NCBI RefSeq assembly: GCF_902713615.1
Contig: NC_052171.1
Span: forward strand, 806,001 to 870,000
DNA from: Scyliorhinus canicula
Taxonomy: Eukaryota
Reading direction: 5' to 3'
Length of the DNA: 64,000 nt
The position numbers and the translations under genes are program-made. Below the pieces are notes generated by a model. It saw only the letters and a program-made list of their open reading frames with translations. It was not told where the DNA came from and made no database searches. Positions 14,236 to 46,572 of the stretch are shown here, in pieces. The stretch's first letter is position 1; each line of letters starts with the position of its first letter.

Positions 14236-14680
14236 CTGAATGAATGGAGGGAAAAAATTAATAACATGCATTGAATAATTTAAAAAATGAAACTATACAT
14301 TCATTAAAGGGTGTGGAGGTGTAGGTGGTGAGACACTGAAAGGTCTCTCCAGCCTCAGACTGGGTCTCATTGATTTAAAAATAATTGAACACACTAGACT
14401 CCAGGAATTGTAAATTATTATTTATGCTGTTGAAGGCTTTGGTCCCTCCCAGGCTGCTTTCCTGCCCCTTTCCTTCACTCTGTGCAGGAATGAGTTCAGC
14501 ATTCAGGCCTTGAAGGGATGGGGAGGTAGAGGGGGACGGGACAGAGAGCGGAAATTTGACTTTATATTTAAAACCAAACCCAGAACCAAAGGGGCTGATG
14601 GAGAGGGGGGGGGGGGGGGGGGGGGGGGGAGCGTTCACTCCCACTTGCGTTTCTTCATTTTCCCCTGCTCGAATCCTCAC

Positions 14681-14687
14681 CTGCCAT
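14681..14687 (-). CDS. PPP2R2A: PP2A regulatory subunit B55-alpha, coding part of exon 1 (ATG GCA G)
   Basis: Minus strand reads tccgccATGGCAG|gtgagg: strong Kozak context, 7 coding nt and a canonical donor. It splices in frame to the exon at 14158-14235, giving MAGVGSGGNDIQWCFSQVKG, the B55-alpha N-terminus. Confidence 0.92.
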
Positions 14688-14960
14688 GGCGGAAGCGGCT
14701 GGAAATGGAGGGAGCAGGCGTTCGCGCAGTGCCCAAGGATGAGGCCGGAGCTGCAAGCGGACAGGCCGGGCTGCACTGGCTGAGGATGGCGGCGGATTGG
14801 TTTCGGATGGAGCTGCTGTGCCCTCCCCCGCTCTCTGAGCCCTTCAAAATGGCGGCGCGCCCGCCCCGGCCATCTTCCGATGACGTCATGGCAGCGGGAA
14901 GGGAGGGGGCCGAGCAGGAGCAAGGGGGCGGAGCCGGGGGCGGGGCCAGCTGCCTGCCCA
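14688..14960 (-). promoter_or_regulatory. CpG-island promoter and 5' UTR of PPP2R2A
   Basis: GC/CpG-rich. YY1-type AAAATGGCGGC (14846-14856) and GCCATCTT (14869-14876), palindromic CRE TGACGTCA (14881-14888), GC boxes near 14924-14947. Confidence 0.8.
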
Positions 14961-15832: not shown

Positions 15833-16102
15833 AAAATTGCTGTAAAATTGCTATTGCTGTAAAATGGAAGGAAGGACTGGGATGCAAATTCAAAGTGCAC
15901 AAGTGGCCGTTCCTTGAGTGTTGAGCCCAGACAATGTGCAGTGGGAGGCTATTTAACTGCAGAACACTTCACAACATATTGTGGCACATGATGGAAAGCA
16001 CACATGTTCTGGGGAGTGAGGGGGCTTCTCCAAGCTGTGATTTGTGGATGTCACCCCAACCCGTCGTGGGTTCGAATCCAACTCCAGGGACATGAACACA
16101 TT

Positions 16103-17334
16103 GGCGGGATTCTCCGTACCCCGGCACCAAAATCATGATCGGCAATCAGGCGGAGAATGGATTCCGACACCGGAATCGGGGCCGGTGCTGCTCTGACAGT
16201 GGTCCGCCATGCTCCGCCCCCTCCAAACCGGCATCATCGTGACACGCGCGCCATTTCAACGACGCTGGCACGTCATCAGATGGCCCACCATTCGGGTCAC
16301 CCATGATACTCCGCCCCCAATGGGCCGAGTTCCCGACAGCGCGGGCCACGTGTGGTCCCGAGCGTGTGGGAACCCGGCATGCCGGCTGCAGACTGTGTCC
16401 AGCGCCGCCACACTCGGCTGGTATCTGTGCCACTGGCTGTGGGGGCTTCTGCCAGGGCTGGGGGACTGGTGGGGGGTGGCCAGGGGATGGGCTGTGGGGT
16501 CAAGGTTGGCAGTTTGAGTTCCTGCACGGCCAGTGCCATGTTGTGTGATGCGGCTGATGCACGTTGTCAGCTGTGTACATGCACGGCCCGGGACCCGGCC
16601 ATTTCCGGCACAGTCGGCGGGAGTTTCACTCGGTGCCGGTGCTAGCCCTTCATCGGTACTGGAATTGGTGAGGGTTTCAGGGCGAATATTCAGTCGTGAA
16701 GGTTCACATGCTGCTCCGTCAACACGGCATAATTCTCTGGTCTCCGATGCCGAAATCATGTTCGGCGATGAGTCGGAGAATCCCCATTGGCGCCGCTTTT
16801 GTGATGCTCCGCCCCCTCCAAAATGGCATACTCTGCGAGTACGCCACACACCGTATTAATGGCCTCAGGATGTCACCTTAGGCCCTCCCCCGATACTCTG
16901 CCCCCCGATGGTCCGGATTCCAGACGCCGTGGGTCACTCATGCTATTTTTTTGGGGTGCTCAGCATGGCGGCTGCGGACTTAGTACAGCACCGCCACAAT
17001 CAGGGGGGGAGCCGATCCACGGGCAGGGCTTTGGCGTGGCCAATTGTGGGGGGTGGCGAGCCTGGCCAAAGGAGTTCACTATTTGACAGGCCGGGTCCGC
17101 ACGCGGCCGGTGCCATGTTGCAGAGCGCAGCCACTGCAGACCTTTGCCATGCGCGGCCACGGACCCGGCAATTCTCCGGGCGTATCTGTAGCTAGAGGCG
17201 GGTGCTCGATGCTACATGCCTGCTACCCCCCCCCCCCCCAGCAGATGGGAGATTGGTGGCCGTTTTGTGCTGTTTCTTCGGTTGTCAGAATCGGAGAATC
17301 CAGCCCTTAGTCTCCCAAATGGAGAATCTTGCCC
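16103..17334. mobile_element. Composite or nested PIF/Harbinger non-autonomous elements
   Basis: Left end ggcgggattctcc; two right ends, ggagaatccagccc (~17293-17306) and ggagaatcttgccc (~17321-17334); 16120-16330 is repeated in diverged form at ~16740-16940. Confidence 0.75.
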
Positions 17335-36610: not shown

Positions 36611-39600
36611 TGATGCGACCATCAATTCATTCAGAGACACGAGTTGAAGTAAACTGTGGCTTTAATCAGCTTACAACTGAGCCTGCCTGCGACTGTACTA
36701 AACTGAGGGCGGACTCGCAGGACCGCAGCACTTATACTTCCTGAAGGGGGTGGAGCCGAGGGCGGAGCCCTGTACATGCTCCTCATCTCCCCCTGTGGGC
36801 AGAGTCGTGCAACGGCTCACAGATGGAGCCCAGAGGGACACAGTAATGTACAGTGTGAATTATAGTGGTTACACATTCACCACATTCACCCCCTGTTAAA
36901 AAAATCAAGTTCAGCAGGGGTGACGGGTCTACAAGTTCAGTCGGTCCGGCGCCCGAATCGTGCGTAGCGACCGACGAAGTACCGGTGTTGCAGCCGTCTC
37001 GGATGGCTGTGGAAGGATGTTCGGTGCGGGTCCGGGAGTGGACTCCGGGGATGGTTCTACCTGAGCTTCGTTCCTGCAAACCGGTGTGTAGGGCGGAAGG
37101 GAGCACGGGTAGCAAATAGGCACAGGGGCGCAGGGCATGGGAGGTCGGGTGGGGTGTAGAGTGGGAGGTACATCGGCGGTAGTGGTAGTAGAGTTTCAGG
37201 TGCCAGGTCCCGGAGGGAAATGGTCTCCTGTCGGCCATCAGGGTGTTCAACGAACGCGTAGTGGGGGTTTGAGTGCAGGAGTAGGACCCTCTCTTCCAGG
37301 GGGTTGGTCTTATGTGTCCGAACGTGTTTTCGGAGGAGGACAGGGTCCGGTGTCGTCAACCAGGGCGGAAGCGAGACCCCCGTAGTAGTTCCCTAGGGAA
37401 GGCAAATAGGCGATCATGAGGAGACTGATTCGTGGCCGTACAGAGGAGGCACCTAATAGCATGGAGCGCATCGGGAAGGACCTCCTGCCAGTGGGAGGTC
37501 GGGAGATTCCTGGACCGTAGGGTCAGTAGGATGGTCTTCCAGACCGTCGCATTCTCCCTCTCCACCTGCCCGTTCCCCCTGGGGTTATAGCTGGTAGTCC
37601 TGCTTGAGGCCATGCTGTTACTGAACAGGTACTGACGCATCTCGTCGCTCATGAAGGATGAACCCCTGTCGCTGTGGACATAGTTAGGGAAACCGAACAG
37701 GGTCAAGACACTGTGCAGGGCTCTGTTGACTGTATGGGAGGTCATATCGGGGCATGGGATGGCAAACGTGAAACGGGAGAATTCATCTATAACGTTGAGG
37801 AAATAAACATTGCGATTAGTTGAAGGGAGGGGCTCTTTGAAATCGATGCTCAGGCGTTCACAGGGCCGGTATGCCTTTACCAGGTGTGCCTTGTATAAGA
37901 CCATAAGACATAGGAGCGGAAGTAAGGCCATTCGGCCCATCGAGTCCACTCCACCATTCAATCATGGTTGATTTCAACTCCATTTACCCGCTCTCTCCCC
38001 ATAGCCCTTAATTCCTCGAGAAATCAAGAATTTATCAATTTCTGTCTTAAAGACACTCAACGTCCCGGCCTCCACCGCCCTCTGTGGCAATGAATTCCAC
38101 AGACCTACCACTCTCTGGCTGAAGAAATTTCTCCTCATCTCTGTTCTAAAGTGACTCCCTTTTATTCTAAGGCTGTGCCCCCGCGTCCTAGTCTCCCCTG
38201 CTAATGGAAACAACTTCCCTACGTCCATCCTATCCAAGCCATTCATTATCTTGTAAGTTTCTATTAGATCTCCCCTCAACCTCCTAAACTCCAATGAATA
38301 TAATCCCACGATCCTCAGACGTTCATCGTATGTTAGGCCTACCATTCCTGGGATCATCCGTGTGAATCTCCGCTGGACCCGCTCCAGTGCCAGTATGTCC
38401 TTCCTGAGGTGTGGGGCCCAAAATTGCTCACAGTATTCTAAATGGGGCCTAACTAGTGCTTTATAAAGCCTCAGAAGTACATCCCTGCTTTTATATTCCA
38501 AGCCTCTTGAGATAAATGACAACATTACATTTGCTTTCTTAATTACGGACTCAACCTGCAAGTTTACCTTTAGAGAATCCTGGACTAGGACTCCCAAGTC
38601 CCTTTGCACTTTAGCATTATGAATTTTGTCACCGTTTAGAAAATAGTCCATGCCTCTATTCTTTTTTCCAAAGCGCAAGACCTCGCACTTGCCCACGTTG
38701 AATTTCATCAGCCACTTCTTGGACCATTCTCCTAAACTGTCTAAATCTTTCTGCAGCCTCCCCACCTCCTCAATACTACCTGCCCCTCCACCTATCTTTG
38801 TATCATCGGCAAACTTGGCCAGAATGCCCCCAGTCCCGTCATCTAGATCGTTAATATATAAAGAGAACAGCTGTGGCCCCAACACTGAACCCTGCGGGAC
38901 ACCACTTGTCACCGGTTGCCATTCCGAAAAAGAACCTTTTATCCCAACTCTCTGCCTTCTGTCTGACAGCCAATCGTCAATCCATGTTAGTACCTTGCCT
39001 CGAATACCATGGGCCCTTATTTTACTCAGCAGTCTCCCGTGAGGCACCTTGTCAAAGGCCTTTTGGAAGTCAAGATAAATAACATCCATTGGCTCTCCTT
39101 GGTCTAACCTATTTGTTATCTCTTCAAAGAACTCTAACAGGTTTGTCAGGCACGACCTCCCCTTACTAAATCCATGCTGACTTGTCCTAATCCGACCCTG
39201 CACTTCCAAGAATTTAGAAATCTCATCCTTAACGATGGATTCTAGAATTTTGCCAACAACCGAGGTTAGGCTAATTGGCCTATAATTTTCCATCTTTTTT
39301 CTTGTTCCCTTCTTGAACAGGGGGGTTACAACAGCGATTTTCCAATCCTCTGGGACTTTCCCTGATCCCAGTGACTTTTGAAAGATCATAACTAACGCAC
39401 CACTATTTCTTCAGCTATCTCCTTTAGAACTCTAGGATGTAGCCCATCTGGGCCCGGAGATTTATCAATTTTCAGACCTTTTAGTTTCTCTAGCACTTTC
39501 TCCTTTGTGATGGCAACCATATTCAACTCTGCCCCCTGACTTTCCTGAATTGTTGGGATATTACTCATGTCTTCTACTGTGAAGACTGACGCAAAGTACT

Positions 39601-42600
39601 TATTAAGTTCCTCAGCTATTTCCTTGTCTCCCATCACTAGATTACCAGCGTCATTTTGGAGCGGCCCAATGTCTACTTTTGCCTCCCGTTTGTTTTTAAT
39701 GTATTTAAAGAAACTTTTACTATCATTCCTAATGTTACTGGCTAGCCTACCTTCATATTTGATCCTCTCCTTCCTTATTTCTCTCTTTGTTATCCTCTGT
39801 TTGTTTTTGTAGCCTTCCCAATCTTCTGACTTCCCACTACTCTTTGCCACATTATAGGCTCTCTCTTTTGCCTTGATGCATTCCCTGACTTCCTTTGTCA
39901 GCCATGGCTGCCTAATCCTCCCTCTGATAACCTTTCTTTTCTTTGGGATGAACCTCTGCACTGTGTCCTCAATTACTCCAAGAAACTCCCGCCATTGCTG
40001 TTCTACTGTCTATATGGTCTATAGAAGAGCGGTTTACACTCCGCGCAGATCGAGCAATTCCTGGTGACGGCTTTAACCTCTTCCGTGAAGAAGGGCAGGT
40101 TGCGGGCCTAGATGTAATGGGCAAGCCGGGTGACCCCCGGATAGCAGAGGTCATCGCGGATCGCCTGAAGACGGTTGTCTTGCGCGCTGGCGCATGTGCT
40201 GCGGGACAGGGCATCTGGGGGCTCATTGAGCTTCCCAGGATGATATACGATATCGTAATTGTAGGTGGAGAGTTCAATCCTCCACCGCAAGATTTTGTCA
40301 TTCTTGATTTTGCCCCGCTGCGAGTTGTCAAACATAAAGGCAACCGATCTCTGGTCGGTGATGAGGGTAAACCTCCTACCTGCGAGGTAGTGCCTCCAGT
40401 GCTGTAAGGCTTCCACAATGGCTTGGGCTTCATTTTCGACTGAGGAGTGTCGAAGTTCCGAAGCGGAGAGGGTTCGGGAAAAGAACGCTACTGGCTTGCC
40501 TGCCTGGTTCAGAGTGGCAGCGAGAGCGACTTCTGAGGCGTCGCTCTCCACCTGGAATGGGACGGACTCATCTACCGCCCGCATGGCAGCTTTGGCGATG
40601 TCCACCTTAATGCAGTTGAAGGCCTGGCAAGCCTCTGCTGACAATGGGAAGTGTGGGCGGGCTTTATCCGCATACTGGGGGATCCACCGGGCGTAGTATG
40701 AAAAAAAACCCGAGGCACCTCTTGAGGACCCTGGAACAGTGAGGGAGAGGGAGTTGTAAGAGGGGGCACATACGGGCAGGGTTGGGTCCTAGGACTCCGT
40801 TTTCCACGACGTAGCCGACGATGGCTAGCTGGTAGTGCGGAAAACGCATTTCTCCTTATTATAGGTGAGATTGAGTTTTTGGGCAGTTTGGAGAAATCGG
40901 TGGAGGTTGGCGTCGTGGTCCTGCTGGTCATGGCTGCAGATGGTGACATTATCCAAGTACAGAAAAGTGGCCCCCAGCCCGTACTGGTCCACCATTCGGT
41001 CCATTGCTCATTGGAACACCGAGACCCTGTTTGTGACACCAAAGGGAACCCGGAGGAAATGGAAAAGGCGGCCGTCTGCCTCGAACGCCGTGTAGTGGCG
41101 GTCCTCCGGGCGGATTGGGAGCTGGTGATATGCAGACTTCAGATCCACTGTGGAGAATATACGGTACTGGGCGATCTGATTTACTATGTCTGCAATCCGG
41201 GGGAGGGGGTACGCATCGAGGTGCGTGAACCGGTTAATGGTCTGGCTGTAATCAACCACCATCCGGAGCTTTTCCTAGGTTTTGACGACCACCACCAGAG
41301 CTCTCCAGGGGCTATTACTGGCCTCTATGACTCCTTCACGCAAAAGACGCCAGACTTCGGACCTGATTAAAAACCCTGTCCTGCAGGCTGTACCTCCTGG
41401 AGAGTGGCCACTGGTTAGCGAAGAGTGGAGGGGGGTCAATTTTCAGAGTTGCTAGACTACAAATAGTGAGTGGGGGAAGGGGCCCGTCAAAGCTGAGTGA
41501 TAGGCTCCTGAGGTTGTACTGGAAATCCAGTCCTAGGAGGAGGGGGGCGCAGAGGTCTGGGAGCACATACAATTGGAAATTGGTGTAGTCGGCGCCCTGT
41601 ATTGTCAGAGTCGCAGTACTGTGCCCCTGTATTTGGACTGAGTGCGACCCCGAGCCGAGGGAGATTATTTGCTGTGTCGGGAACATCGGGAGCGAGCAGC
41701 GCCTTACCAGTTCTGGGTGAACGAAGCTCTCAGTACTTCCGGAGTCGAACAGGCACGGTGTCTCGTATCCGTTGATCTTGACGGACATCATGGAGCTCTT
41801 GAGGTGCTTTGGCCGCGACTGATCCAAAGTGGCTGCACTGAGCTGCGGGTAGTCGGTGGCGTGGTCGGCGGTGCTGGAACGGCCCCGTGATGACTGTCCG
41901 CGGAGGTCGTAATCTTCGAGTGACGTAACGGGTGATGGCCCAGATGGCGGCCCCCGTTGATCGCACGTGGCGGGCAGCGAGGAAGATGGCGCCCAAGATG
42001 GCGGCCCCCATGAATCGCGCATGGCCGGCCGCGTGGGGGAGGATTGCCAAGATGGCGGCCCCCGGGAGTCGCACATGTTGTGCGGAGGTGGAGTCGGCAG
42101 TCACGCTGCCACATTACGGGGTCTGCGGGCCTGGGAGTCGGAGGAGCGAGTGTTCGGGTTAGGGTTCGAGTTTTTAGATTTGGCCAGGCAGACCTTCGCA
42201 AAGTGCCCTTTTCTCCCGCAGCTGCTGCAAGTCGCATTTCGGGCTGGGCATTGCTGCCGGGCGTGTTGGTGCTGGCCGCAAAAATGGCACGATAGCCCTC
42301 CGAGGTGGGCGGGTGGCCGCGCGGCACAGGCCTGGGGCAGTCTTTGGTCGGGGGGTCCACGACGGGGTCGCGTGATCGGCCGGGAACGCAGTTAGGCTTT
42401 GGAAAGCAACAACCGTGTCCTCCAGGTCCTGGGCCCCTTTCTCGAGAAGATGCTGCCGCACATAATTAGATCGGACCCCTGCAACATACACTTCTCAGAC
42501 GGCGAGTTCCATGTGCTGGGAGGCTGTCACGGCCTGGAAGTTAAAGTCGCGTACTCGGGCTTTAAGGTCGCGCAGACAGTCTTCTAGCGATTCCCCAGGG

Positions 42601-43192
42601 CGTTAGTGGCGTGTTGTAAAGATGTGTCACGTGTAGACTTCATTCACGGGCCGCACGTACAGGCGGTCGAGTATCGTATAAGAGTCAGTATAAGAGTCAG
42701 TTACATCAAGTTGAGTAGAAATACGATGGCTCACCCGTGCGTGGAGGAGACTGAGTTTCTGTTCTTCTGTAACAGAGGAAGTAGTCGACGCAGCCAGGTA
42801 GGCCTTGAAGCACCGAATCCAATGCAAAAGAATTTCCTTTGCTTCTGCGGCCTGTGGATCGAGTTCCAGTCGGTCAGGTTTGAGGGCTGATTCCATAGTA
42901 GTTTTTAAGTCGATTAAATTGATGCAACCATCAATTCATTCAGAGACACAAGTTGAAGTAAACTGTGGCTTTAATCGGCTTACAACTGAGCCTGCCTGCG
43001 ACTATGCTGAACTGAAGGCGGACTCGCAGGACCGCAGCACTTATACTTCCTGAAGGGGAGGAGCCGAGGGCGGAGCCCTGTACATGCTCCTCATCTCCCC
43101 CTGTGGGCAGAGCCGTGCAACGGCTCACAGATGGAGCCCACAGGGGCACAGTAATGTACAGTGTGAATTATACATATTATACATTCACCACA
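36611..43192 (-). mobile_element. Gypsy (Mag-like) LTR retrotransposon, near full-length, decayed
   Basis: LTRs 36611-36884 and 42920-43192; perfect 5-bp TSD caggc; purine-rich tract aacagggggtgaa; gag with CCHC, protease FDSGS, RT (DLKSAYHQ..PFG), RNase H (ESDAS..TDQRS), integrase (VHSDRG..NGQVER) in Gypsy order. Confidence 0.95.
37895..40011 (-). mobile_element. Young 5'-truncated CR1 LINE inserted in the Gypsy integrase
   Basis: Open 471-aa RT ORF (37974-39389) plus a 189-aa upstream frame separated by one frameshift; splits the integrase between FYRP and KAHLVKA. Confidence 0.95.
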
Positions 43193-44970
43193 CAGGCAAA
43201 GTATCGTCGTCGGACTCAGGAGTTTTTCGAGCCTCGCTGGTAGAGAAAATGGCAGAGGCTCCTGCTGGAACTTTGAACTATCCATGGACAGCCAAGATGC
43301 TGGCAGACATCTTGGTGGAGGAATTCAAGAGGTAGCAGCAGGTGGACTCTGAGGATCTTCGTTCGTGTGGCAATGGAAAAGACGGTTCGGAAGTTAAACG
43401 AGCAAGGCTTGGTGATGCAAGGGGTGGAGGTGGCATTCTTGAACCACCTGGATTATTTATCTGGAAGCAGAGAAGGCGGTGCTGACTGACACGCAGAAGG
43501 CGGTGAAGGAAGTTCCAGATGGGGCAATTTGAGAGTAGTTCGGCATCAGAGGATCTGGAAGGACAAAATCCGTCAGACTATATGTTCAGGATGTTTAGGA
43601 AGTTGGTGGGAATTGGATCGGGCCCATCGGTCACTCAGGCAGACGCCCCGATCTGGAGAACCACCACGGGCTATCATTGTCAGGTTCCACAGTTACCAAC
43701 AGAAGGAACAGGTCCTGAGTAGGTGAAAGACCATAGAGACTATGGATAAGAGGGATATGCCATCAGGATATATCAAAATGTGGAAGCAGAACTGACTAGG
43801 TGTGCAGCGTTCAACAAGGCCGTGTTGTATAGAAGTAATGTGCGATTCAGGGTGGTCTACCCTGCACATCTTCAAATGATTTTCAAAGAGAGAGGCTATT
43901 ATTTTGAGGCGCTGGATGATGCGGCCAAGTTCGTAAAGAAGCATGGGCAGGATGTGAATCAATTGTTAACTGGTAGACGCATTTGTATCTGTATTTAGTG
44001 TGATTTTTTGTATTGTGGATGAGGGCATGTGATTATGGGGATTTCCTCGGAGGGTGGTTCTGGGCATGTTTGGTGTTTGTATTTTGTATTTTTGGAGTTG
44101 TTTGATGGATGGGTGTTGGTTTTCTTTTCCCTTCTGTCTTTTTGTATTAAATTTGGATGTGGGCAGGGGCTGGTTGTCAGTATGATTATTTTCCTGGGTT
44201 TACTCTGAGCGGGGGTCACCCTGCTAGCTGTAAAGTTAGTTCATAGGAGCGGAAGAGTTGGGGTAACTACTGCTCATTACTTTAGTTTTTTTTAAATTAA
44301 TGAGTGTAGAATTTTTGTTCTTATTTTGTTTGGGGTTGGGTGTGGGGGTGGAGGATAGGAGTCTATATTCTCCTTTTGGCTGTTTGTTTGTTTATTGGGA
44401 TATGGTAGTGCTGGGTGGCAGAGTGGAGGGAAGGAGTAAACCATGGATGGTGACTGATTCTTTGTCTTTGTTCTGGTTTTATGGCCGGTTTGGTGGCCAT
44501 CTTGGGTGGGCCTGGTATCCGCCACTCGTTGAGTTTCGGCTGGGTAACCCCACGTGATGGGAATGGCTGATAGGGTGGCTGACTGGGTTGGTGGCGGAGT
44601 CGGGGTGGGGGTGGGGGGAATGGTGGAAGGCCCCTGTCTGGCTGATAACTTGCAATGTAAGAGGGGTTGAATGGCCTAGTTTTCACACCTCAAGGCTGAT
44701 GAAGGTCCTACAGGGGACCCATTGTGGATCAAGGACCAAACATGGGTATGGAAGGGTTGAATGGGACATGTATATCATTTGGGTTTCAATGGTACGGCTT
44801 GGGGGGCTGCAGTGTTGATCAACAAGATCAGCTGAGAAAATATGGGTGGGCCCAGGTGGGAGTATGTAATTGTCAGCAGACAGTGGGTCGCTGGCAGGAG
44901 GTCGGTGGTCCTAGTTAATTTGTGTGCACTGAATTGAGATAATATGGCATTTATCAAGGTCAAGTCCTAA

Positions 44971-45705
44971 GGGCGAGATTCTCCGCACTCCCGACGGTGC
45001 GGAGAATAGCGTGGCTCGTAAAATTTTACGGCCACGCTGTTCCAACGCCCTCCCGCTATTCTCCCCCCCCCCCCCCCACGCCCAACTCTCGACACAAATC
45101 GCTGCCGCCGTTTTTTTACGGCAGCGATTCACAGCTGATAGATGGGCCGAGTTCCCAGCCCTTTACGGCTGTTTTTACGAACGGCAAACACACCTGGTCT
45201 GGCCGTTCGTAAACACGGCCGTAAACACTCGCATTTTATAACCATGGCACCGATTGGCACGGCAGTACCACGGCCGTGCCAAGGGTGCCATGGGCCCGCG
45301 ATCGGTGGGCACCGATCGCGGGCAGTGGGCCCGATGCCCGCGCACTATTTCTGCTTCCGTCGCCCCGCAGTATCCATTCGCGGGGCGGCTGAGGGGCATC
45401 CCGGCCCGCGCATGCGCGGGTTTCACGCAAATGCGCGATGACGTCATCCGCGCATGCGCGGGTTGGAGTCTTCCAATCCGCGCATGCGCGGCTGACGTCA
45501 TATGACGCGTCAGCCGGCGCTAACTCCGGCAAGCGGGCTTAACGAAATTCGTTAAGCCCGTGATGCCGGAGCTTACGGCGTCGGGCTGCTAGCCCCGACC
45601 GGGGACCAGAATTGGTTCCCGGTCGGGAAGGGGGGGGCTGGCGTCAAACCCGCCCGGGTTTGACGCCAGCCTTACGATTTCTCCCGTTTTGGGAGAATCG
45701 CGCCC
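44971..45705. mobile_element. PIF/Harbinger MITE, 735 bp, multi-hairpin
   Basis: TIRs gggcgagattctcc / ggagaatcgcgccc; TAA TSD on both sides (44968-44970, 45706-45708). Confidence 0.92.
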
Positions 45706-46572
45706 TAAGTCTCTGAGTCCATCAGGGTGAAGGTGAAATTGGTCTTTATGGAACAGATGGGGAGGCAGGCCCATGGAGATTTAGGTAAGGGATAGGGAGG
45801 CTTTTTTCTTACGTCCATTATGTCTACTCCCAGAGTGACATCTTGGTGGTGGGTAGGTCTCATCTTCCTGGAGAGTGAAGGGGTTGGGGTGCACAGCGAT
45901 CGTTATTTTGGATCATGCTCCGTATTTTGTAGACTTGATGCTGGAGCAAAGCCCCTCTCAATGAAATTTCCCTATGGAAATGGGACACGGCGTTTCTGGT
46001 GGACAAGGGATTCTGTGAGTGTATATCTTCTACCATTGGGAAGTACGTTGAATTCAATTGGATCAAGGCGTTTTCGCCTCCCACTCTGTGGGAAGCTCTG
46101 AAGGCGGTCGTTAGCTGGGGGTGTGGGGAGGGAGGGGGGGGGGGGGAATCTCCTATAAGGAGTAAAAAGATAAATGTGGAGAGGCAGTAGCTGGTGGATT
46201 CCATCCTCGAGGTGGACCAACACCGGAGCTGTAGGTGGGTAGGAAGAAACTGCAGGCAGAATTTGAGCTGCTCCCGACCGACAATGCGGTGAACCAGCTG
46301 CGACGCACAAGGGGGGCCTTTTACAAACATGGGGAGAAGATCAGTCATCTTTTGGCACACCAACTGAGGTGGCAGGCTGCCGCCCGGCAGATATTGCAGA
46401 TAAGGGATTCGGGTGGTGGGTTGGTTTCCACCCTCGGGAAGGTTAATGTGGCGTTTGAGGCTTTTTAGCAAGAGAGCTACACGAGTCAGAGCATCCATAG
46501 GAGAGGTTGCCATTGAGGCAGTTTTTGGACGGGTTGTCTTTCCCAGGGGTGGAGCAGGGGAGAAGGGAAATA

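What the first reader, a model, noticed from the sequence alone, without database searches (positions are those of the whole stretch)
44971..45705. Harbinger MITE built as a chain of ~15 back-to-back hairpins with an NRF1/CRE motif cluster
Seen: between Harbinger TIRs with a TAA TSD, almost every base lies in a local palindrome, and most palindromes differ from one another in sequence. Examples: attctccgcac/gtgcggagaat (44978-45007), gcccgcgatcggtg/caccgatcgcgggc (45294-45323, 14 bp perfect), cgggcttaacgaa/ttcgttaagcccg (45534-45560), ggctggcgtcaaacccg/cgggtttgacgccagcc (45636-45671, 17 bp perfect). It carries three GCGCATGCGC motifs (45408, 45450, 45480) and two TGACGTCA motifs (45439, 45493), and CpGs are intact. 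Established: GCGCATGCGC is the NRF1 site, TGACGTCA is the CRE, and many MITEs form only a single terminal fold-back. Inference: the serial hairpins may be maintained for transposition (cruciform/ssDNA structure or Myb/SANT partner binding), or the element may act as a mobile housekeeping-type promoter or small-RNA source.
Basis: partly seen in the sequence, partly recalled or inferred. Interest (0 to 1): 0.8.

Follow-up and report, generated by a model that had tools for sequence, protein, structure and literature searches.

The report
Shark jumping gene made of palindromes
This 735-base stretch is a young, non-coding cut-and-paste transposon (Harbinger type) in a shark genome; its body really is a chain of about 13-16 different DNA palindromes around a CpG-rich cluster of promoter-type motifs, but no other copy could be fetched, so what the palindromes do is untested.

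Summary
There is a TAA duplication on both sides and 14-bp inverted ends matching 13/14. Three GCGCATGCGC lie in the element, the only ones in 64 kb, and two TGACGTCA. GC is 63% and CpG o/e 1.23, against 0.51 for the window. Ten of the window's 26 perfect hairpins (stem >=9 bp) lie in these 735 bp. Single-strand folding gives z = -19 (DNA) and -24 (RNA parameters) against shuffles, and 13 simple hairpins cover 77% of the element.

It meets every testable criterion of a non-autonomous PIF/Harbinger (Tourist-like) element. Both strands fold equally (-466.8 / -466.9 kcal/mol, 17 G-U pairs each), most spacers are 0-4 nt and no Rfam family matches, so the palindromes look like a DNA-level feature, not an RNA gene. 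The left 250 bp holds an array of TTTACG(GC) and TIR-core (GGAGAAT) repeats in both orientations, probably protein-binding sites. The centre is a mirror-symmetric CRE-NRF1-CCAAT-NRF1-CRE cassette.

Covariation, copy number, the autonomous partner and methylation are therefore untested. Other first readers of this scan noted the same MITE type in more than 10 other windows of this genome; none of those notes has been followed up. Verdict: real and unusual, but a member of a known kind.

The parts
44968..44970 (.). left target-site duplication TAA
44971..44984 (+). left terminal inverted repeat GGGCGAGATTCTCC
   Evidence: 0 mismatches to the pattern; 5 hits in the window against 0.51 expected
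44978..45007 (.). hairpin 1: TIR core ATTCTCCGCAC paired with a subterminal inverted copy GTGCGGAGAAT (11 bp, loop 8). The same arrangement, with a longer loop, is seen in the old relatives at 16102-16160 and 16725-16785
45006..45040 (.). hairpin 2, centred on CGTAAAATTTTACG
45017..45225 (.). left subterminal array: TTTACG/CGTAAA seven times (0.44 expected) and TTTACGGC four times (0.04 expected), in both orientations; a third TIR-core copy ATTCTCC at 45058; C15 tract at 45063-45077
45080..45147 (.). hairpin 3 (perfect inner 11-bp stem 45097-45129)
45142..45156 (+). 15-nt block ATGGGCCGAGTTCCC, shared exactly with old relative unit A (16320-16334) and in degenerate form with unit B
45162..45225 (.). 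hairpin 4 (24-nt arms, 92% complementary; outer arms are TTTACGGC/GCCGTAAA)
45242..45293 (.). hairpin 5 (CCATGGCACC...GGTGCCATGG enclosing TTGGCACGGC...GCCGTGCCAA)
45294..45323 (.). hairpin 6, perfect 14-bp stem, 2-nt spacer; abuts hairpin 5 with no gap
45355..45393 (.). hairpin 7 (GCCCCGC/GCGGGGC core; contains the GC-box-like GGGGCGG)
45405..45420 (.). spacerless 16-bp palindrome CCCGCGCATGCGCGGG (NRF1-type site 1)
45427..45514 (.). central cassette: 30-nt arms 45438-45467 / 45472-45501 (93% complementary, 4-nt spacer), reading CRE-NRF1-(CCAAT at 45474)-NRF1-CRE; then TGACGCGTCA at 45502-45511
45516..45582 (.). hairpin (17-nt outer arms, perfect inner 13-bp stem 45534-45560 with 1-nt spacer)
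45594..45627 (.). hairpin, 15-nt arms with 1 mismatch, 4-nt spacer
45636..45671 (.). hairpin, perfect 17-bp stem, 2-nt spacer
45677..45700 (.). terminal hairpin TCTCCC-GTTTT-GGGAGA, pairing the inner part of the right TIR with a subterminal inverted copy
45692..45705 (-). right terminal inverted repeat (reverse complement GGGCGCGATTCTCC)
45706..45708 (.). right target-site duplication TAA
16102..17306 (+). two old, diverged relatives in tandem (unit A 16102-16700, unit B 16720-17306) with the same TIR type, the same first hairpin and the shared 15-nt block; neither folds better than shuffles

Best explanation
Shown: the segment is one young, intact copy of a non-coding PIF/Harbinger-type (Tourist-like) transposon. 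It has 14-bp TIRs, a TAA duplication, no coding capacity, and older relatives with the same ends 28 kb away. Shown: its body is a chain of DNA-level palindromes. They are strand-symmetric, mostly have 0-4-nt spacers, and differ from one another in sequence. Inferred mechanism: a Harbinger transposase and its Myb-like partner, supplied in trans, move the element through the TIRs and the left subterminal array of GGAGAAT and TTTACG(GC) repeats. Because these repeats occur in both orientations, they account for the hairpins at the two ends and in the left 250 bp. Inferred: the remaining palindromes most likely arose by repeated local inverted duplication, that is polymerase template switching or fold-back priming during replication or during repair of the gap left by excision. 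This process is known to create and re-perfect hairpins. They persist in the active lineage either neutrally, since the interior of a MITE is unconstrained, or because palindromy doubles binding sites. Inferred: the central CpG-rich, mirror-symmetric CRE-NRF1-CCAAT-NRF1-CRE cassette is promoter-type DNA. It may be inherited from the autonomous partner's promoter, and it could keep copies unmethylated and accessible. It is not an RNA gene.
For: Identity: TSD and TIR. ORFs have no homologues. Relatives share the TIR, the first hairpin and a 15-nt block. DNA-level palindromes: z = -19.3 and -24.5; 45% coverage by perfect stems against 0.5% in shuffles; 10 of the window's 26 hairpins. Three other shark loci, 99 kb in all, have 0.1-1.1% coverage. 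The plus and minus strands fold to -466.8 and -466.9 kcal/mol with 17 G-U pairs each. Arms are perfect or near-perfect and spacers short. No Rfam family reaches its threshold. Binding-site arrays: TTTACGGC four times (0.04 expected), TTTACG seven times (0.44 expected), ATTCTCC/GGAGAAT four times (0.05 expected), all but three of these copies in the left 250 bp, the three being a TIR-core copy in the right TIR (45692) and TTACGGC and TTACGA sites (45573, 45672) near the right end. The TIR-core inverted pair is kept in the old relatives without compensatory change, so it is a conserved motif and not a conserved structure. Cassette: all three GCGCATGCGC of the window; ATGACGTC three times against 0.01 expected; CpG o/e 1.23 and GC 63% over 735 bp. 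Template switching as a generator of hairpins: PMC8794818, PMC10710096, PMC13100816. Palindromic internal repeats in a Harbinger MITE of Xenopus: PMC12676858. The Myb-like protein binds Harbinger ends: PMC2836001, PMC13668399.
Against: Only one copy was available, so I cannot show that the palindromes belong to the family consensus and not to this copy. I also cannot show whether stems carry compensatory changes or simply decay. A purely mutational origin does not easily explain why 77% of a 735-bp element is palindromic when the rest of the window is at about 0.7%; that degree of saturation hints at selection for structure. No autonomous partner was seen, so the claims about binding sites and promoter inheritance rest on analogy. 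The right-half hairpins share no motif. The old relatives show no hairpin chain (z about -1 to -2), which could mean the chain is not needed for mobility. A decay simulation shows the signal would be lost anyway at 25-30% divergence, and the two units are only 59% identical to each other.
Confidence: 0.5

Rival explanations
1. The chain of hairpins is a selected cis-acting adaptation for transposition. Extruded cruciforms, or hairpins in transiently single-stranded DNA, would keep the element nucleosome-free, recruit architectural proteins, help bring the ends together, or favour copy-number gain at replication forks.
For: The palindromes are extremely saturated (77% of bases; z = -19 to -24). 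Several arms of 13-30 nt have 0-4-nt spacers, the geometry that extrudes cruciforms. The hairpins differ in sequence, as expected if structure and not sequence is what matters. First-reader notes in other windows claim compensatory stem changes in this MITE type (s1-198251; unchecked).
Against: No known PIF/Harbinger system requires internal structure; activity maps to the TIRs and subterminal sites (PMC2836001). Old relatives with the same ends show no chain, although decay could have erased it. No covariation data could be obtained here.
Confidence: 0.2
2. The element acts mainly as a mobile CpG-island-type, orientation-independent promoter or anti-methylation module, with NRF1, CREB/ATF, NF-Y and Sp1 sites. 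It would seed unmethylated, transcribed islands, and some copies would be co-opted by host genes.
For: Over 735 bp it satisfies CpG-island criteria: GC 63%, o/e 1.23, 89 CpG. All of the window's NRF1-type sites are in it. The cassette is mirror-symmetric, so it would read the same in both orientations. An identical 24-nt CRE-NRF1 composite occurs in an unrelated eukaryote-like metagenome contig, showing the pair is a natural promoter-type arrangement. The old relatives still have CpG o/e 0.76-0.79 against 0.51 for the window. Xenopus Harbinger MITEs became enhancers (PMC12676858).
Against: High CpG is equally explained by youth: the TSD is perfect and the stems near-perfect. This copy lies in TE-rich DNA about 30 kb from the only promoter-like island I saw, with no exon nearby. 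No methylation, ATAC or CAGE data are available. Other young TEs in the window also have o/e 0.8-0.9.
Confidence: 0.15
3. The element is a source of small RNAs. Read-through or internal transcripts would fold into shRNA-like hairpins, for example the 30-bp stem at 45438-45501, and be diced into siRNAs or miRNAs.
For: As RNA it folds to -467 kcal/mol, z = -24.5. Weak generic matches to miRNA-precursor models fall on the central hairpin. MITE-derived miRNAs are known (Made1/mir-548, PMC1784062; template-switch miRNAs, PMC10710096).
Against: Every Rfam match is far below its gathering score (33 bits against 268). The perfect strand symmetry and equal G-U use give no sign of selection on one transcribed strand. 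Most stems are shorter than a Dicer product plus flanks. There are no expression data.
Confidence: 0.08
4. The palindromes are scars of nested transposon insertions that later excised, through opening of hairpins on the flanking DNA. An earlier follow-up in this scan proposed this for a catshark hAT MITE.
For: Lead from s1-243477. Short spacers and exact arms are what hairpin opening produces.
Against: It would need more than 10 independent events in 735 bp. Arms of 13-30 nt are far longer than usual P-nucleotide tracts. The palindrome centres share no TWA or other target-site signature.
Confidence: 0.05
5. The pattern is a chance or compositional artefact of GC-rich DNA, or an assembly artefact.
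For: None beyond the high GC content.
Against: None of 500 dinucleotide shuffles approaches the observed coverage, and no fold shuffle reaches the observed energy. Other GC-rich parts of the window have no hairpin clusters. The window contains no N.
Confidence: 0.01

Closest known systems
Tourist-like MITEs of the PIF/Harbinger superfamily (e.g. mPing, mobilised by Ping/Pong ORF1 + transposase)
   Same: 3-bp TWA target duplication, short GG-initial TIRs, a few hundred bp, no coding capacity, dependence on a transposase plus a Myb-like DNA-binding partner supplied in trans (PMC2836001).
   Different: At 735 bp it is at the long end of the range. Its interior is a chain of 13-16 unrelated palindromes instead of unstructured sequence or one fold-back. 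It is CpG-island-like, whereas plant Tourist elements are AT-rich.
Xenopus tropicalis Harbinger-N12A_XT (and Kolobok-N2_XT) MITEs (PMC12676858)
   Same: A vertebrate Harbinger MITE with internal repeats 'of palindromic nature' that spreads transcription-factor sites and became a regulatory element.
   Different: The Xenopus element is 342 bp and carries liver-factor motifs acting as enhancers. It has a few repeated palindromes, not a near-saturating chain of different ones, and no CpG-island-type NRF1/CRE cassette is described.
Subterminal hexamer arrays of Ac/Ds (AAACGG repeats bound by Ac transposase; textbook knowledge)
   Same: A short motif (here TTTACG(GC) and GGAGAAT) repeated in both orientations within about 250 bp of an end. 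This is the likely way part of the palindromy arises.
   Different: A different superfamily (hAT). Binding has not been tested here. The motif array explains only the left third of the element.
Bacterial REP/BIME clusters
   Same: Back-to-back arrays of short imperfect palindromes forming a mobile or repeated unit.
   Different: These are prokaryotic, mobilised by a Y1 (RAYT) enzyme through single-stranded DNA, and their palindromes belong to a few sequence types. There is no homology, only a resemblance of form.
Template-switch-generated hairpins (PMC8794818, PMC10710096, PMC13100816)
   Same: Exact inverted copies with short spacers that arise in one mutational step and can re-perfect stems or expand palindromic transcription-factor sites.
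   Different: They are described as isolated events in genes, rRNA and promoters, not as a process that fills a transposon.
Made1 / hsa-mir-548 (PMC1784062)
   Same: A MITE whose palindromic structure gives a Dicer-substrate hairpin.
   Different: Made1 is an 80-bp single palindrome with demonstrated small RNAs. Here there are many short hairpins and no expression evidence.

Membership tests
PIF/Harbinger non-autonomous element (Tourist-like MITE) | 3-bp target-site duplication of TWA type | tested here: met
   TAA at 44968-44970 and 45706-45708
PIF/Harbinger non-autonomous element (Tourist-like MITE) | short terminal inverted repeats | tested here: met
   14 nt, matching 13/14; the same TIR type is found in three more elements or fragments of the window, 5 hits against 0.51 expected
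PIF/Harbinger non-autonomous element (Tourist-like MITE) | small size and no coding capacity | tested here: met
   735 bp. The longest ORF (108 aa) has no homologue among 5.8 billion clustered proteins or 1.84 billion representative proteins, apart from one spurious low-complexity hit
PIF/Harbinger non-autonomous element (Tourist-like MITE) | [quoted passage not shown] | not testable with these tools
   None of the ten long ORFs scanned against Pfam (of 38 ORFs of 130 aa or more) matched a transposase family; the other 28 were not scanned.
PIF/Harbinger non-autonomous element (Tourist-like MITE) | many homogeneous copies in the genome | not testable with these tools
   There is no second copy in the window. 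The only indication is unchecked first-reader notes on other windows
CpG island / housekeeping-type promoter | length >200 bp, GC >50%, CpG o/e >0.6 | tested here: met
   735 bp, GC 63%, o/e 1.23
CpG island / housekeeping-type promoter | unmethylated in the germline, and transcription starts in it | not testable with these tools
   no methylome, CAGE or ATAC data are available
miRNA / hairpin-RNA locus | match to a described RNA family, or strand-specific structural conservation | tested here: not met
   The best Rfam hit scores 33 bits against a gathering score of 268. The two strands fold equally with equal G-U use
miRNA / hairpin-RNA locus | small RNAs mapped to the arms | not testable with these tools
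   no small-RNA data
Structured element under selection (covarying stems) | compensatory substitutions across copies or subfamilies | not testable with these tools
   No other copy could be fetched. The old relatives are too diverged to use (59% identity), and simulation shows the signal is lost at 25-30% divergence

The most novel reading that the evidence does not exclude
A high-copy shark Harbinger MITE family has evolved a body that is palindromic throughout as an adaptation. The hairpin chain would be needed in cis for efficient mobilisation (cruciform or single-strand recognition, or fork-associated amplification). Its mirror-symmetric NRF1/CRE core would make each insertion an orientation-independent, methylation-resistant mini CpG island, so the family would scatter new bidirectional promoters through the genome.
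Probability: 0.15. Interest if true: 0.8.

Novelty: new member of a known kind. Interest (0 to 1): 0.45.

Why it matters
How MITEs reach high copy numbers, and which internal sequences tune them for transposition, are open questions. Vertebrate PIF/Harbinger elements are poorly studied, and one survey reports them absent from the elephant shark (PMC9179366). A family whose interior is almost saturated with distinct palindromes offers a natural experiment. If stems covary between subfamilies, DNA structure is a cis determinant of Harbinger mobility. If they only decay, the element shows template-switch or fold-back repair acting repeatedly on one sequence. Separately, a mobile CpG-rich NRF1/CRE cassette could show how new CpG islands and promoters are seeded in a methylated vertebrate genome. 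If neither holds, it is simply an uncatalogued Tourist-like MITE.

Tried and rejected
1. Other copies in the window: blastn and nhmmer found only poly-C matches.
2. Copies through spurious ORF translations: the word-indexed search of 5.8 billion proteins gave nothing. Exhaustive phmmer against 1.84 billion representatives gave one spurious repeat protein, P0121.
3. Exact DNA patterns in JGI metagenomes: the TIR plus first hairpin gave no hit. The CRE-NRF1 core gave one unrelated AT-rich eukaryote-like contig, L001.
4. Fetching shark DNA through annotated genes. The window's RT ORF is not on record. A shark-expanded GPR139-like family gave protein ids for S. canicula, S. torazame and Mustelus asterias, but every look-up returned 'no DNA: the sample's file is too large'. 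Zebra shark and whale shark loci (L002-L004, 99 kb) were readable but contain no such TIR, no nhmmer hit and no hairpin-dense stretch. That sample is too small to show absence.
5. Paralogous empty site for the insertion: none in the window.
6. Using the old relatives (16102-17306) as a test of conservation. They do not fold better than shuffles, but at 59% mutual identity with transitions about equal to transversions, and given the decay simulation, the result is uninformative.
7. Long-range fold-back or duplicated hairpin modules: rejected. Reverse-strand self-matches are only local, and the arms are unrelated to one another except for the three NRF1 units.
8. Nested-MITE or excision-scar reading: the palindrome centres share no target-site signature.
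9. Rfam: nothing near threshold.
10. Literature searches found no description of this family or architecture in sharks. Dfam and Repbase cannot be queried here. Sinzelle et al. 2008 is not held.

Full report
OBSERVATION. It is flanked by TAA on both sides and ends in 14-nt inverted repeats, GGGCGAGATTCTCC and the reverse complement of GGGCGCGATTCTCC, matching 13/14. The repeat finder lists 21 local inverted-repeat pairs. They include perfect stems of 17, 14, 13, 11 and 11 bp and a 30-nt-arm palindrome (93% complementary) with a 4-nt spacer. Perfect stems of at least 9 bp with loops of at most 20 nt cover 45% of the element. The mean in 500 dinucleotide-preserving shuffles is 0.5% and the maximum 10%. 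The whole 64-kb window holds 26 such hairpins and 10 of them lie in these 735 bp. Three loci from two other sharks, 99 kb in all, show 0.1-1.1% coverage.

Folded as single-stranded DNA the element reaches -275.7 kcal/mol against -151.9 +/- 6.4 for shuffles, z = -19.3. With RNA parameters z = -24.5. The MFE structure has 13 simple hairpins covering 77% of the bases, several of them abutting with no spacer, for example 45242-45293 directly followed by 45294-45323. GCGCATGCGC occurs three times, and these are the only occurrences in the window (0.01 expected). TGACGTCA occurs twice. GC is 63% and CpG o/e 1.23 (89 CpG), against 0.51 for the window and 0.39-0.46 for the flanks. The only corrections are that 'almost every base' is 77%, and that the hairpin count is 13-16 depending on how nested and alternative pairings are counted.

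WHAT IT IS. The window is shark DNA. Its SINE and LINE content and the best protein hits of a LINE reverse-transcriptase ORF are to sharks, and earlier notes of this scan name the small-spotted catshark. The element meets every testable criterion of a non-autonomous PIF/Harbinger (Tourist-like) transposon:
- a 3-bp TWA duplication and short TIRs;
- 735 bp with no coding capacity; the longest ORF has no homologue in two very large protein searches;
- the same TIR type on three further elements or fragments of the window (5 hits against 0.51 expected).

Two of those, unit A (16102-16700) and unit B (16720-17306), are old relatives. They share with the element the TIR, the first subterminal hairpin (ATTCTCCG...CGGAGAAT) and a 15-nt block ATGGGCCGAGTTCCC in collinear order. 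Otherwise they cannot be aligned to it. The insertion lies in TE-rich DNA, with LTR and LINE remnants on both sides and no exon-like ORF nearby. It is about 30 kb from the only host-promoter-like CpG island I noticed.

ANATOMY. From the left:
- The TIR core is paired with an inverted copy (hairpin 1), and a third core copy lies at 45058.
- A C15 tract follows.
- The region 45017-45225 holds TTTACG seven times (0.44 expected) and TTTACGGC four times (0.04 expected), in both orientations, forming the arms or centres of hairpins 2-4.
- Three CpG-rich hairpins of unrelated sequence follow.
- The centre carries a spacerless 16-bp palindrome CCCGCGCATGCGCGGG and a 30-nt-arm palindrome reading CRE-NRF1-(CCAAT)-NRF1-CRE, followed by TGACGCGTCA.
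- Four more unrelated hairpins follow.
- A small hairpin pairs the inner part of the right TIR with a subterminal copy.

No long-range fold-back exists, and apart from the NRF1 units the hairpins are not copies of one another.

DNA OR RNA. As RNA the two strands fold to -466.8 and -466.9 kcal/mol, with 17 G-U pairs each. A structure selected in a transcript normally tolerates G-U pairs on the transcribed strand, which weakens the other strand; there is no such asymmetry here. Nine of the 13 hairpins have loops of at most 4 nt in the fold. Two palindromes have no spacer, and the arms are exact or nearly exact Watson-Crick copies. Rfam gives only generic hairpin matches far below threshold. I therefore read the palindromes as a DNA-level feature.

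HOW IT MOST LIKELY WORKS. In PIF/Harbinger systems the Myb-like ORF1 protein binds terminal or subterminal sequences and brings in the transposase (PMC2836001, PMC13668399). The GGAGAAT and TTTACG(GC) repeats in both orientations are therefore the natural candidates for its sites, much as AAACGG hexamers serve Ac. They explain the palindromy of the ends and of the left third. The TIR-core inverted pair is the only hairpin for which I have cross-family data. It is conserved as a motif, without compensatory change, which fits a binding site better than a structure.

For the remaining, sequence-unrelated palindromes the simplest generator is local inverted duplication by template switching or fold-back priming. 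This process is documented to create and re-perfect hairpins and to expand palindromic transcription-factor sites (PMC8794818, PMC10710096, PMC13100816). A transposon that repeatedly goes through excision and gap repair, and whose interior is unconstrained, would accumulate such events. This is inference. Its weak point is the near-saturation of the element, which hints at selection for structure, so I keep that rival at 0.2.

The central cassette is promoter-type DNA by established motif knowledge (NRF1, CREB/ATF, NF-Y, Sp1), and it is mirror-symmetric. It could be a remnant of the partner's promoter, and it could keep copies unmethylated. Youth explains the intact CpGs just as well. The same 24-nt CRE-NRF1 composite turned up in an unrelated eukaryote-like metagenome contig, so the pairing occurs elsewhere in nature.

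WHAT COULD NOT BE TESTED. The decisive test, covariation across copies, needs other copies, and none could be obtained. There is none in the window, none through translated ORFs and none in the metagenome scans. The readable zebra shark and whale shark loci carry no relative. The old in-window relatives do not fold better than shuffles. A decay simulation shows that the element's own signal stays at z <= -5.9 up to 15% divergence but fades into noise at 25-30%. The two old units are only 59% identical to each other, so their lack of hairpins says nothing either way.

EARLIER NOTES OF THIS SCAN. More than ten first-reader notes from other windows of the same genome describe ~700-bp multi-hairpin MITEs and NRF1/CRE cassettes. 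None has been followed up, and I could not see their sequences. They suggest the architecture belongs to the family and that the family is abundant, but they are leads, not evidence. One note claims compensatory stem changes (s1-198251); I did not test that. A follow-up on a hAT MITE read its palindromes as excision scars (s1-243477). Here the palindrome centres share no target-site signature, so I rate that reading low.

COMPARISON AND NOVELTY. The element is a member of the Tourist-like MITE kind. The closest published parallel is Xenopus Harbinger-N12A_XT, a MITE with palindromic internal repeats that spread transcription-factor sites and became enhancers (PMC12676858). The differences here are the number and diversity of the palindromes and the CpG-island-type cassette. 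I found no paper describing such a family in cartilaginous fishes. One survey even reports Harbingers absent from the elephant shark (PMC9179366), and a grey reef shark genome paper only lists Tourist/Harbinger as the commonest DNA transposons (PMC12498223). Dfam and Repbase could not be consulted.

VERDICT. This is a real, statistically extreme and probably uncatalogued architecture inside a known kind of element. The functional readings remain open. Interest is 0.45.

Noticed in passing
window 14650-14950: CpG-island-like candidate host promoter. It has a YY1-like AAAATGGCGGC, TGACGTCA at 14881 and two GGGGCGG boxes. On the minus strand GCCATGGCAG|GTGAGG looks like a start codon followed by a 5' splice site. 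The two old Harbinger-type relatives lie 1.2-2.4 kb from it.
   Followed up: no
window 36611-43058: Between LTR-like direct repeats (36611-36749 and 42920-43058, 95% identical) the 471-aa RT ORF (37974-39389, minus strand) has best hits of LINE (CR1/jockey) type. It is flanked by integrase (rve) and aspartyl-protease ORFs on the same strand, so the element may be composite.
   Followed up: partly
L001 1-1061 (JGI metagenome contig Ga0209679_1193018): AT-rich eukaryote-like contig carrying the identical 24-nt ATGACGTCATCCGCGCATGCGCGG (508-531) and a perfect 22-bp-stem hairpin at 127-181. It is not a copy of the shark element.
   Followed up: partly
L002 25698-25799 (zebra shark, GCA_030684315.1): An isolated perfect 44-bp-stem hairpin with a 14-nt loop.
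   Followed up: no
window 17310-17334: A 25-bp fragment ending in a third right-hand TIR (GGGCAAGATTCTCC, 1 mismatch) lies 3 bp (TTA) beyond the end of unit B. This suggests one Harbinger-type element inserted next to or into the end of another.
   Followed up: no
P0122-P0241: 'Probable G-protein coupled receptor 139' genes are greatly expanded in sharks. All but one of the 120 best hits listed are shark genes, dozens of them from Heterodontus francisci and Rhincodon typus alone.
   Followed up: no
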